From: Magallana gigas
Taxonomy: Eukaryota
Direction of reading: 5' to 3'
DNA length: 64,000 bases
NCBI RefSeq assembly: GCF_963853765.1
Contig: NC_088854.1
Coordinates: 51,522,001 to 51,586,000, forward strand
Within the stretch, counting starts at the first letter, position 1; each line of letters opens with the position of its first letter. The translations under genes and the position numbers were made by a program. The notes under the pieces are model-generated. The model was not told the origin of the DNA. It saw only the letters and a program-made list of their open reading frames with translations, and did no database searches. Below are positions 44,608-48,680 of this stretch, piece by piece.

Positions 44608-47600
44608 GTTAGGTAATACATGTACACTGTACCTAACTTTTTGAAAGATGTATATTTTCAAAAAAATCTCAGTTTTTTTCTCATTAAAATAGTTAAACTA
44701 AAATATGATATGAAATATACCAATTATTACATATCCAAGGTTCCTTAGCTTTGCTTTTACATGCATCTCTATAAACAACAAAACAGATAGCAGATTTGCA
44801 CCCTGACTAAACTCACCTCTGATTCTGGGGAAGCTCCACATATATACATCCCCCCAAGCCCCTCCCTCCTGAAGTAGGTCCCAGTGATGTCCACAGTAAG
44901 AGGAGTGCTAATCCCCGGGCCGTTGTGACAGTGATAGGCATAAATAAATCTTTTCCTGTGTAAGACAAATAGATAGCAGTAATGACAAAATTGCTTATTT
45001 TATTTCTGAGTCTTATTTCATTATATATACTTGTAAATTTATGGTTTTCATTTTGAAGTATTTATTGATTAGAAATGCAAATTAATTAATTTAGAAAATC
45101 AGTATCCCTATTAGACAGTTCATGAGTTGTGTTAGAATTTTGCTTTCATAATAAAACAATTTCTTACATTTGCATACAAAATAACATGCTTCTGGCAATT
45201 ATATGGTGTACATGTATTATCCATTGTTAAGAAGAAACATTTACTATGGTATGCATATAACTGCAAGCATGAATAAAGAGCTAGGTAGGGTAAAGAAATT
45301 AGTCTTTTATTGGCTGCCGTATTTGGGCCGTAATATACAAGTGTCATATAATAGTTTAATTCATTGTACCGCAAATTAAACTGAACCCGGGTTCAATATA
45401 TTTGGGGGTGGAGGGGTGGAAGGGCTCAATGTATCACAGTAATATTTTGAACCCGGGTTCAATATATTGGGGGGTTCTAAATATTATATGACACCAGTAT
45501 GTTCTGTATATGTATGTTAGAATCTCTTTGTGGCTAAAATTAAATTATACGTACTAAGTGCCGACATACTTTCGTCCTCCAGATATAGATCTCTTTATTA
45601 GAGAGATGAATACTTTTATTTGTATTTTAGGGGAAAGAGTCCAACAAAAGTTATCTCAAAATGGTGAGTCCTTATATTCTAATAGGAATTTCAGAGATGT
45701 ACATTTAATCCAAGCCTACAAAGGGACATGCACTTTGAGAAAACTGGACTGTACCAGCAAATAAACAACATACTTTTTACTTTAAATAGGTGAAATGGAT
45801 CTGTTGATTTGCAAATAAATTACAAGTGTACCAAAACATGCTTTGAGAGTGTTAATAAGGTTGTTACCTGGGTACCACAGGTAAGGGAATGGATAACGCC
45901 CCCGTTTCGGTCCCCATTCCTGCCAGCTCTCCTATCTGGCCAGCCCACGGTCCAGCACAGTTCACAACCTGATGACAGTTGGTCTCAAACATATCTCCAT
46001 CAGTGTCCCTTGACTGTGGATAGTTGAACAACACAATGAATAAACATTGTTATAAAGGTACTCATCTCTTCCATGAAAAATCAAGACATTAATAGACTAT
46101 AAAATTGGATTTTCTGGGGGATGCTGTTGATTTTATTTTTGCAATATTAAATTTTGCTGTTTCATCTCAATCTTAAAAAATTCATATGCAATAAAAAAAA
46201 AATTTTTTTAAATAATATTGGTAAAATAGTAATAAAATTTAAAAAAAAATGTACTATTTTTTAACCAAAACACACTTACTTGAAAAAAAAAGCCTGCTTA
46301 TGAAATCTGATTAAAATATAGATCTCTACAATAGTGCAAAGTGCAAAGAGGTCAAACAACGACCCATTGAGAGTCATCTTTCATGGCTTCAGAATAAACT
46401 TTATCATTTGCATGAAAGATAAATTTATTAATAATCACAATTAACTTTAAGAGGTAGATGGTAATATTGTTTAATCAAAGTACTGAAGAACTGACGGGAG
46501 TTGATTTTGTCGATGTTAATATATTTTAAAATCAATGATATCTTATTTTGCATGACAAGTACATTTTTTAAAATATGAATTTTTGGACTTTTTCGACAAG
46601 AATGTCGAGAAACCCCCATCATGTTAAATAATATTTAAAGATAAAATTAATTCAATCAAACTATGTATCAGTAATAGAAATATTTCTCGAAAACTGTATG
46701 GATCCAAGCAATATTGAACTTTAGTCTCGTTCAACCAAACGCTCGGCTGACGAGACTCTCTGCTTGTTGGAGATCTACGGAGACAGCCGAGCGTCGACTT
46801 GAACGAGACTATATTGAACTCTGGCGTAGGAATATATACGACTACAAAAAATGTCTGAATTGTTCGTACCATTTAAAATCTAACTATTTTCAAGGTATTT
46901 GTAAATAAGTTTCCTTGAAAAACAATGCTTTAGCATACATTACATCAAATTTATCAATTTTTTTCAAGAACTAAGTCTTGTCAGCAGCGATGATTTGTGC
47001 TGAGGTCCAAACGCTGTTTCACTTTCGGTTTGTCCAAGTAACTGCATAGGAGAGTTGATTAAAATCAACTCCCAAAAAGATCACTTTCAGAAGATTGTAA
47101 CTTGCCATATGATTGGTTAAATCAATGTTTATTCTGACATCTCAGAACATAACCCACATCAAATTGTCAGAACTCTCTGAACTTTGTGCTTCCGTAGAGA
47201 TCTTTATTCAGATTGGGGGGTTAAGTAGAAGCATCCATACATGTACTTCAAGTGGCTGTGGTCTTTATGCAAGAAATCCAAGAAACTGATCATCAGAGAG
47301 GAAAGACTTACTATGACAGAGACGAGCACATACTTACTATGACAGAGGCGAGCACATACTTACTATGACAGAGGCAAGCACATACTTACTATGACAGAGG
47401 CGAGCACATACTTACTATGACAGAGGCGAGCACATACTTACTTTGACAGAGGCAAGCACATACTTACTATGACAGAGGTGAGCACATACTCACAATGACA
47501 GAGGCGAGCACATACTTACTATGACAGAGACGAGCACATACTTACTATGACAAAGGCGAGCACATATTACTATGACAGAGGCGAGCACATACTTACTATG

Positions 47601-48680
47601 ACAGAGGCTAGCACATACTCACAATGACAGAGGCGAGCACATACTTACTATGACAGAGACGAGCACATACTTACTATGACAGAGGCGAGCACATACTGGT
47701 TGCCAATTGTTTCTGGTGCACTTAATTTTTTGGTGAAGCCAATGACCTCAGCATCAATATACCGCACTCCAAGGCCGATGTTTCTCTGTTTCAGGGCAGC
47801 CAGGAGTGAATGGGGATCAAACCAGCCCTCCCCGTTTAAACCTGAACAAGGAAACAAACAAATGATAGACCTGTTAGGACCAATTTCTGGGATAAATCTA
47901 CCAATAATGTTGAATGGATAATCCACTGTGGAATCCTTGGATTTCATGGGAGCCATTGTCTATGGGTATTCGAAAAGTTACTGTTGTGTAATGATGTAAA
48001 TTTGTGAGCTACCATTTCTATAAGAAAAATATATTAATTAACAGTTCCTCCTGTTTACCAAGTATACCTAGTTTACAATACACAAAGATTGAGTTACCAT
48101 TTACAAAAACAATTTTTTAAGGAAAACAAAATGGTTTTATGCTAACAAAATTTTAGAATACATAATTATACTGTAGTCATGGAATTTATTATGGCATTTT
48201 TATTTTTTACTTAGTTCACAATAAAAGCATTAAATATGGTGCATTCATATTAAATTATTTCTCTCAGTTCTCATAGCAATTAAAGGGGTTAAGACATTTA
48301 CTTTCCTAGATTTCTTCCATTAAGAAATTTTACGAGGGTAAATGTTCATTAATTACTCATAAGAATTGATAAACTGATGTATATATTTTAAAAGAAAAAT
48401 TTATTCTCTGTGGAGTGAAAGCCACAAGAAAGATACCAAGGGCAGGGAAGATACACTTCTTTCTGTCTCAGTATTTATCATGGTATATGTGTCACTACAA
48501 AATATTTTCTTTTTGATTTAAAAAATATACTTTACATTTAATTAATTAAACTTTAAGCATTGAAAGAAACAATTTCACACTGCCATTGACATGGTCGCTA
48601 TTTTGAATGTTCTGTAGTCCTTAGATTAAGTTTGTAAAATTGTTTGTCAAATATTTCGTAAATATAATTTAGTGTAGAAT

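What the first reader, a model, noticed from the sequence alone, without database searches (positions are those of the whole stretch)
47307..47697. Minisatellite made of 15 tandem 5' splice sites in FOXRED1
Seen: the 26-bp unit is the last codons of the exon plus the donor. All 15 units keep GT: 12 read GTAAGT, 2 read GTGAGT and 1 reads GTAATA. Only the first donor (after 47675) keeps the frame, because read-through meets TAG within one unit and a 26-nt step shifts frame. The original intron start appears to be the farthest copy. Inference: 14 consensus decoy donors compete with the productive one. Copy number could tune productive versus NMD-targeted mRNA of a complex I assembly factor, or the array is a natural test of how the upstream-most donor is chosen. 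Dense U1 binding could also affect premature polyadenylation.
Basis: partly seen in the sequence, partly recalled or inferred. Interest (0 to 1): 0.75.

Follow-up and report, generated by a model that had tools for sequence, protein, structure and literature searches.

The report
Splice-donor minisatellite in oyster FOXRED1 intron
A 26-base piece spanning the end of exon 7 and its splice donor in the Pacific oyster FOXRED1 gene has been copied 15 times in tandem, but every assembled mRNA uses only the first copy, as in a repeat type already known from human F7 and amphioxus "mirages", so it is real but ordinary.

Summary
Window 47306-47697 (gene on the minus strand) holds 15.1 tandem 26-bp units. 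Each unit is the last 20 nt of FOXRED1 exon 7 plus a 5' splice site: 12 GTAAGT, 2 GTGAGT, 1 GTAATA. Only the first donor, after 47675, keeps the frame.

The array is not an assembly artefact. Contigs from five other sequencing runs read into it, and two array haplotypes exist. The unit occurs nowhere else in the 564-Mb genome. Saccostrea cucullata has no array at the orthologous boundary.

The proposed competition between donors is not supported:
- Twelve M. gigas and five congener transcript contigs join 47675 to 46013 exactly.
- The exact full-length protein is on record in 346 blocks of transcript-sized contigs.
- No inspected isoform uses a decoy donor.
- Three polyA RNA-seq runs give zero depth inside the array, though with low power.

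Rare, NMD-cleared decoy use cannot be excluded.

This is a known kind: a minisatellite whose first unit spans an exon-intron boundary. Examples are human F7 IVS7, IFI6, CBS, LMNB2 and PDGFA, and amphioxus "mirages". The scan has already noted many such arrays elsewhere in this same genome. Saccostrea FOXRED1 carries an independent 47-copy array at the next exon's donor.

The parts
47306..47697 (-). Minisatellite: 15.1 tandem units of 26 bp (one unit of 25 bp). Each unit is the last 20 nt of exon 7 plus a 5' splice site.
   Evidence: TRF; unit table; unique to this locus in the genome.
47675..47841 (-). FOXRED1 exon 7 (167 nt). Its last 20-23 nt form the exonic part of the first repeat unit.
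   Evidence: Transcript contigs align 47842-47675 at 100%; junctions resolved; translation matches FOXRED1.
47673..47674 (-). Authentic, productive donor GT (ATA|GTAAGTAT), the only one seen in mRNA.
   Evidence: 17 of 17 transcript contigs join 47675 to 46013.
47311..47648 (-). 14 intronic pseudo-donors, with the first G at 47648, 47622, 47596, 47570, 47545, 47519, 47493, 47467, 47441, 47415, 47389, 47363, 47337, 47311. All would give a premature stop.
   Evidence: No RNA depth in bin 47355-47531 in three RNA runs.
46014..47674 (-). Intron 7 (1661 nt): 363 nt of decoy array, 606 nt of dispersed repeat and about 690 nt of other sequence.
   Evidence: The orthologous Saccostrea intron is 268 nt and has no array.
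46473..47078 (.). High-copy dispersed 606-bp element inserted in intron 7. It is unrelated to the array.
   Evidence: Loose ends at 46473 and 47078 and very high depth on both strands. At least 3198 first-look candidates, and 40 full-length copies at 85-91% identity scored.
45868..46013 (-). FOXRED1 exon 8, with the acceptor AG at 46015-46014.

Best explanation
This is a lineage-specific, polymorphic minisatellite of the "mirage" or F7-IVS7 type in intron 7 of the Pacific oyster FOXRED1 gene.

Origin. A 26-bp segment straddling the exon 7 / intron 7 border was duplicated in tandem, probably by slippage between the AGT just upstream of the unit and the AGT that ends GTAAGT. Unequal exchange then amplified it to 15 copies.

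Current state. The first copy still sits in the exon context and supplies the working donor. The other 14 copies are intronic passengers, removed with the intron.

Donor choice (inferred). The splicing machinery picks the first 5' splice site downstream of the exon-7 acceptor, by exon definition or 5'-to-3' first-come selection. This was shown experimentally for human F7. Any stray use of a later copy gives a premature stop and would be cleared by NMD.

Status of each step. Shown here: the array is real, local, variable between individuals and absent from Saccostrea, and the dominant mRNA uses only donor 1. Inferred: the slippage origin, the reason donor 1 wins, and near-neutrality.
For: Structure.

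Local origin: all 15 genome hits lie in the array, with 0 for the control. The consensus unit equals the authentic exon end, and a congener at about 88% nucleotide identity has the identical last 30 nt of exon 7.

The array is real in other animals. Contigs from five other runs read from exon 7 into 2 to 6 units. The independent DNA run X18 has contigs that stop 30 nt into the array from each flank, and word depth is 1167-1786 in the array bins against about 130-150 beside it.

Polymorphism: haplotype B (L007, L012) has a different unit order. Its unit 2 reads GTAATT, its unit 3 reads ATT|GTAAGT, and its next units match window units 6-8, so it is two units shorter over that stretch.

Lineage-specific: Saccostrea cucullata and a second relative end the exon at the same codon and run straight into non-repeated intron.

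Splicing: 12 M. gigas and 5 congener transcript contigs join 47675|46013. All 12 junction-spanning cluster members that I read carry the canonical junction; the exception is the 2012 gene model K1QNC0, whose upstream exonic donor no transcript contig supports. The exact protein XP_019927954.1 is on record in 346 blocks, all with contigs under 5 kb. RNA depth in the array is zero.

Precedent: PMC1557585 covers F7, IFI6, CBS, LMNB2 and PDGFA. PMC3087553 and PMC3902484 cover amphioxus mirages that do not disturb splicing.

No sign of selection on GT: P about 0.33. In the Saccostrea sister array, 14 of 40 units have lost GT.
Against: Assembled contigs show only dominant isoforms.

The one raw-read experiment allowed gave FOXRED1 exon depth of only 1-4x. 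Its junction table was swamped by the high-copy element in the same intron, so no junction counts were obtained for this intron.

NMD would hide decoy products.

In two human precedents (IFI6, CBS) the first two pseudo-sites are used constitutively, so silence is not guaranteed.

All donors share a perfect +1 to +8 match to U1. In the F7 constructs, pseudo-sites engineered to a perfect consensus match were the only ones that shifted splicing towards themselves.

Copy number in other individuals could not be measured from short-read contigs.
Confidence: 0.8

Rival explanations
1. The 14 pseudo-donors really compete with donor 1, and a sizeable fraction of pre-mRNA is spliced unproductively and destroyed by NMD. 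Array length would then act as a heritable dial on FOXRED1 dosage.
For: All pseudo-donors carry the same exonic 20 nt and the same perfect +1 to +8 match to U1 as the real donor. Every decoy gives a premature stop upstream of several junctions. Array structure differs between individuals. In IFI6 and CBS the nearest pseudo-sites are used (PMC1557585).
Against: No decoy-spliced form appears among 17 transcript contigs or 12 cluster proteins, although variants of the neighbouring intron 8 (retention, alternative donor) were captured in the same clusters. RNA depth inside the array is zero. In F7, identical pseudo-sites are silent. The array is absent from Saccostrea, so it is not a conserved regulatory device.
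Confidence: 0.12
2. The array is a positive cis element. Dense U1 snRNP loading just downstream of exon 7 strengthens exon definition of a donor with no exonic match (ATA|GT), or suppresses the AATAAA signals further down the intron (telescripting).
For: The authentic donor has 0 of 3 exonic consensus positions. AATAAA motifs lie about 90-180 nt downstream of the array on the transcribed strand.
Against: Nothing here tests it. A congener with the identical exon end and Saccostrea with the same donor class splice the same junction, and Saccostrea does so without an array. GT is not preferentially preserved.
Confidence: 0.05
3. The array is an assembly artefact, either a collapsed or an inflated repeat.
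For: Short tandem repeats are error-prone in assemblies. The exact copy number (15) rests on this assembly alone.
Against: Independent contigs from five other runs read from unique exon sequence into 2-6 units. Run X18 contigs enter from both flanks, and word depth is raised in the array.
Confidence: 0.02

Closest known systems
Human F7 intron 7 minisatellite (37 bp x 5-9), Borensztajn et al. 2006, PMC1557585
   Same: The first monomer spans the exon-intron boundary, so the authentic donor is followed by identical pseudo-donors. The array is polymorphic. Only the most upstream donor is used in normal mRNA.
   Different: The F7 unit contains only 4 exonic nt and a weak donor (TGG|GTGGGT). Here the unit has 20 exonic nt and a donor with a perfect +1 to +8 match to U1. 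F7 silence was shown by 50 constructs. Here it rests on assembled transcripts only.
Amphioxus "mirages" (Adh3, TnC, globins, PGBD5), as described in PMC3087553 and PMC3902484
   Same: They are minisatellite-like tandem duplications of exon-intron boundaries in an invertebrate. They vary in length between haplotypes, do not disturb normal splicing, and recur in many genes of one genome.
   Different: The globin mirages have long units (150-160 bp); Adh3 units are 10-72 bp. Those papers discuss them as a route to new introns. No exonised unit is seen here, because every unit carries an in-frame stop.
Human IFI6 (6-16) intron 2 and CBS intron 13 minisatellites (cited in PMC1557585)
   Same: The architecture is the same and the copy numbers are similar (25 pseudo-sites; 15-20 repeats).
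   Different: In those genes the two pseudo-sites nearest the exon are used constitutively. No such use was detected here.
Other splice-junction minisatellites noted by this scan in the same oyster genome (OvoA, VAC14, Vps34, LPGAT1 and a GPCR gene)
   Same: Same genome and same construction. The follow-ups reported use of only the exon-adjacent copy.
   Different: This one is small (15 copies against 25-130). I did not re-test those cases.

Membership tests
Boundary-spanning ("mirage" / F7-IVS7-type) minisatellite | Head-to-tail array of a 10-160 bp unit | tested here: met
   TRF: period 26, 15.1 copies, 92% matches.
Boundary-spanning ("mirage" / F7-IVS7-type) minisatellite | The first unit straddles a real exon-intron junction, so the authentic splice site is reiterated in the intron | tested here: met
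   The exon end at 47675 lies inside unit 1, as fixed by 17 transcript contigs. The units carry GTAAGT, GTGAGT or GTAATA.
Boundary-spanning ("mirage" / F7-IVS7-type) minisatellite | The unit is derived locally from the gene, not from a dispersed satellite | tested here: met
   All 15 genome matches lie in the array and the control gives 0. The consensus equals the ancestral exon end shared with a congener.
Boundary-spanning ("mirage" / F7-IVS7-type) minisatellite | Mature mRNA uses the copy adjacent to the exon | tested here: met
   Searches show this for the dominant isoform. Rare use of other copies is not excluded (one search had low depth).
Boundary-spanning ("mirage" / F7-IVS7-type) minisatellite | Length polymorphism between alleles (VNTR behaviour) | tested here: inconclusive
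   Two haplotypes differ in unit order, and one is two units shorter over the first six units. Whole-array length in other animals could not be read from short-read contigs.
FOXRED1 (FAD-dependent oxidoreductase domain-containing protein 1), the host gene | DAO domain (PF01266) and best matches named FOXRED1 across animals | tested here: met
   Exons hit PF01266 weakly one by one. Full-length transcript proteins carry PF01266 and cluster with XP_019927954.1 and with named FOXRED1 of molluscs and vertebrates.
Regulated unproductive splicing (AS-NMD switch) | The unproductive isoform is detectable and the element is conserved in relatives | tested here: not met
   No decoy isoform was found. The array is absent at this boundary in Saccostrea. 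NMD-blocked RNA was not available.

The most novel reading that the evidence does not exclude
The array may not be neutral in one of two ways.

(a) Because each decoy has a perfect intronic match to U1, a measurable fraction of FOXRED1 pre-mRNA splices from them and is lost to NMD. Array haplotype would then set mitochondrial complex I assembly-factor dosage in oysters.

(b) The recurrence of such arrays points to a mutational process in oysters that preferentially seeds minisatellites at splice junctions. Two observations prompt this: independent arrays at two different FOXRED1 donors in two oyster genera, and an 8-fold excess of tandem AGGTAAGT over its reversed control in this genome.
Probability: 0.12. 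Interest if true: 0.55.

Novelty: new member of a known kind. Interest (0 to 1): 0.25.

Why it matters
On its own it matters little. It adds one more documented case showing that a run of identical strong 5' splice sites does not confuse the spliceosome, because the site next to the exon wins.

Its value is as part of a set. Oysters appear to carry many such arrays. FOXRED1 acquired two independent ones in two genera. These arrays have perfect U1 matches and natural copy-number variation, so they form a ready-made allelic series for testing exon-definition and first-come models of donor choice outside mammals.

For annotation, such arrays can mislead gene predictors. An older UniProt model of this gene skips 24 residues at exactly this exon end.

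Tried and rejected
1. Junction counts from raw RNA-seq. FOXRED1 depth was 1-4x. The joints table was filled by a very high-copy element in the same intron, so no junction rows for intron 7 were shown. Only the depth bins could be used.

2. Closer relatives' genomic DNA. A short-ORF protein search returned only M. gigas alleles, one distant oyster and bisulfite-converted contigs. A metagenome scan returned only distant sequences. M. gigas genome records are withheld from the look-up of encoding contigs. The age of the array within Magallana/Crassostrea and its copy number in other assemblies therefore stay unknown.

3. Selection on GT. Rejected as unsupported (P about 0.33).

4. RNA structure masking the decoys. 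The array RNA folds better than shuffles (-115.8 against -94.7 +/- 5 kcal/mol, z = -4.2), through a G-U-wobble quasi-palindrome (GUAUGUGC). The first donor is paired in the same way as the others, so the fold does not explain donor choice.

5. Dispersed-satellite origin. Rejected.

6. Assembly artefact. Rejected.

Full report
WHAT IS THERE

Read on the minus strand, window 47841-47675 is an exon that ends ...GTC ATA, followed by GTAAGT. Tandem Repeats Finder reports a single array at 47306-47697: period 26, 15.1 copies, 92% matches.

Split in register, the 15 units each hold the last 20 nt of the exon plus a six-base donor. Twelve donors read GTAAGT, two read GTGAGT (units 3 and 8) and one reads GTAATA (unit 5, which lost one base).

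Every standard unit matches U1 at +1 to +8 and at none of the three exonic positions (ATA|GTAAGTAT). The whole donor determinant is therefore copied with each unit.

THE HOST GENE

The exons hit the DAO domain weakly one by one. A full search with the exon 7 peptide led to full-length relatives. Searches with those relatives returned proteins named FOXRED1 from across animals.

The closest proteins match the window exon by exon at up to 100%. They belong to a 45-member cluster that contains XP_019927954.1, annotated as FOXRED1 of Crassostrea gigas, now Magallana gigas. The sequencing-run search pointed to the same organism ("oyster metagenome").

Transcript contigs laid on the window give 11 exons. 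The focal exon is exon 7 (47841-47675). Intron 7 is 1661 nt (47674-46014). Exon 8 is 46013-45868.

FRAMES

Donor 1 is in frame. Donor 2 adds 26 nt and runs into a stop 49 nt into exon 8.

Donors 3-15 all contain an in-frame TAG TAA that begins 24 nt after the normal exon end. This includes the donors whose extension is a multiple of three.

IS THE ARRAY REAL AND LOCAL?

The 392-bp array matches only itself in the 564-Mb genome. The 26-mer with up to three mismatches has 15 hits, all inside the array, and none for the reversed control. The array therefore grew in place from the gene's own junction.

Contigs from five other public runs start in unique exon 7 sequence and read 2 to 6 units into the array.

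In the independent DNA run X18, one contig ends 30 nt into the array from the intron side (47053-47335). Another begins 30 nt inside it from the exon side (47668-48969). This is what a k=31 assembler does at a repeat. Summed word depth is 1167-1786 in the array bins against about 130-150 alongside. That depth is not a copy number, but it is consistent with many copies.

Two haplotypes are visible:
- L010 and L011 equal the window.
- L007 and L012 have unit 2 ending GTAATT and unit 3 with ATT|GTAAGT. Their next units equal window units 6-8, so they are two units shorter over that stretch.

Inside the window's array, the pair of units 2-3 recurs as units 7-8. This is a sign of block duplication by unequal exchange.

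The 14 differences from consensus cluster at the CpG and its neighbour (columns 8-10). None hits GT, but with 14 differences that has a chance of about 0.33. It is no evidence of selection.

AGE

A congener at about 88% nucleotide identity has the identical last 30 nt of exon 7 and splices at the same place. The consensus unit therefore equals the ancestral coding sequence.

In Saccostrea cucullata genomic DNA (L019), the exon ends at the same codon and is followed by GTGAGT and a 268-nt intron with no repeat. A second, unnamed relative (L008, L009) likewise runs from GTAAGT into non-repeated intron.

The array is thus younger than the Saccostrea / Magallana split. I could not obtain genomic DNA of closer species.

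Before the first unit stands ...CCAGT, and each unit ends ...AAGT. The first duplication could therefore have arisen by slippage on a 3-nt AGT microhomology. This is inferred from the sequence.

WHICH DONOR IS USED?

- Twelve M. gigas transcript contigs from twelve runs, and five from the congener, all align 47842-47675 and then 46013-45864, with adjoining query coordinates.
- All 12 junction-spanning proteins that I read from the two 90% clusters carry ...YVLASVI|SRDTDGD.... The one exception is the 2012 gene model K1QNC0, discussed below. The same clusters do contain variants at the next intron: read-through after PVVPR and a +7-residue alternative donor. Minor isoforms were therefore not simply invisible.
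- The exact 505-residue protein is indexed in 346 blocks of the collection, all with contigs under 5 kb, which is transcript size.
- In three polyA raw-read runs, the reads over the exons have the first mate on the + strand, as expected for a stranded library and a minus-strand gene. Exon bins have depth 0.2-4.2. Bin 47355-47531, wholly inside the array, has depth 0 in all three runs. Bin 47178-47354 has 0, 0.31 and 0.

The power of the raw-read test is low. The joints table was filled by a high-copy element in the same intron, so I have no junction counts. The fair statement is that the dominant mRNA uses donor 1 only, and rare decoy use removed by NMD is not excluded.

MECHANISM

The best reading is a neutral or nearly neutral boundary-spanning minisatellite. 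Donor 1 wins because it is the first 5' splice site after the exon 7 acceptor. The mechanism is taken from the human F7 work.

In F7, identical pseudo-sites are functional but silent. Selection goes to the most upstream site, and only pseudo-sites raised to a perfect consensus competed at all (PMC1557585).

The array RNA folds better than shuffles (z = -4.2) through a G-U quasi-palindrome. The first donor is paired like the rest, so structure does not explain the choice.

COMPARISON WITH WHAT IS KNOWN

Minisatellites whose first monomer spans an exon-intron boundary are described for several human genes (PMC1557585):
- F7: 37 bp x 5-9.
- IFI6: 25 pseudo-sites.
- CBS: 15-20 repeats.
- LMNB2.
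- PDGFA.

In amphioxus they are called "mirages" (Adh3, TnC, globins, PGBD5). There they vary between haplotypes and do not disturb splicing (PMC3087553, PMC3902484).

All structural defining features are met here. Length polymorphism is only partly shown.

The scan's own notebook lists 55 notes on minisatellites and splicing in this same genome, with several follow-ups reaching the same conclusion. The "mirage" term came from there, and I checked it in the two papers. I did not re-test those cases, but two results of my own agree with them:
- Saccostrea FOXRED1 carries an independent 32-bp x 47 array that starts 20 nt before the end of exon 8, the next donor along. In it, 14 of 40 cleanly registered units have lost GT.
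- Three AGGTAAGT octamers spaced 12-34 nt apart occur 189 times in this genome, at more than 20 distinct loci among the first 100 hits listed. The reversed control occurs 23 times.

VERDICT

This is a new member of a known kind and ordinary for this genome. Interest is low. Its value lies in the set, as natural material for testing donor choice, and as a warning for gene prediction. An older UniProt model (K1QNC0, P0179) skips 24 residues at exactly this exon end by using an internal GAG|GTCATT, which no transcript contig supports.

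Noticed in passing
L019:6489-7988 and L019:9218-9313 (Saccostrea cucullata FOXRED1, GCA_032062105.1): There is an independent boundary-spanning minisatellite in the same gene of another oyster genus: 32 bp x 46.9 copies, starting 20 nt before the end of exon 8 (...CGACCAAG|GTAAAA). Three more copies of the same unit lie 1.2 kb further on, as if the array had been split by an insertion. Of 40 cleanly registered units, 26 keep GT and 14 read AT.
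   Followed up: partly
window 46473-47078: A 606-bp dispersed element sits inside intron 7 and carries an internal inverted segment (query positions 250-339 also match in reverse). The own-genome search gave at least 3198 first-look candidates, and all 40 scored copies were full length at 85-91% identity. PolyA RNA reads cover it at 100-600x on both strands, against 1-4x for the FOXRED1 exons.
   Followed up: partly
window 47747 (exon 7) / protein P0179 (UniRef100_K1QNC0): An older Magallana gigas gene model joins ...YIDAE directly to SRDTDGD. It uses an internal GAG|GTCATT and drops 24 residues. None of the transcript contigs support it, so it is probably a prediction artefact provoked by the array.
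   Followed up: partly
window 45868 (exon 8 donor); proteins P0245, P0246, P0249: Transcript-derived variants do exist at intron 8: read-through after ...PVVPR (P0245, P0249) and a +7-residue form (DLSGGRK, P0246). Intron 8, not intron 7, is where this gene shows splicing noise.
   Followed up: no
L013-L016 (contigs of four runs) over window ~47700-47960: These contigs are bisulfite-converted copies of the exon 7 region, with nearly all C read as T. CG is retained at several CpGs of exon 7, which suggests gene-body methylation. The only CpG of the repeat unit (columns 8-9) is also the most variable spot in the array.
   Followed up: no
own genome, e.g. G000:C3:165655-168055, C4:56108537-56109774, C6:52929432-52929797, C2:7315153-7315580: Many other short-period arrays repeat the consensus donor octamer AGGTAAGT: 189 triple hits against 23 for the reversed control. 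I did not check whether each one starts at an exon end.
   Followed up: no
window 40991-41907 and 43156-44360: Two 166-168-bp tandem arrays (5.5 and 7.2 copies, 87-88% matches) lie in introns 10 and 9 of FOXRED1 respectively. Their units share the same short open frame.
   Followed up: no
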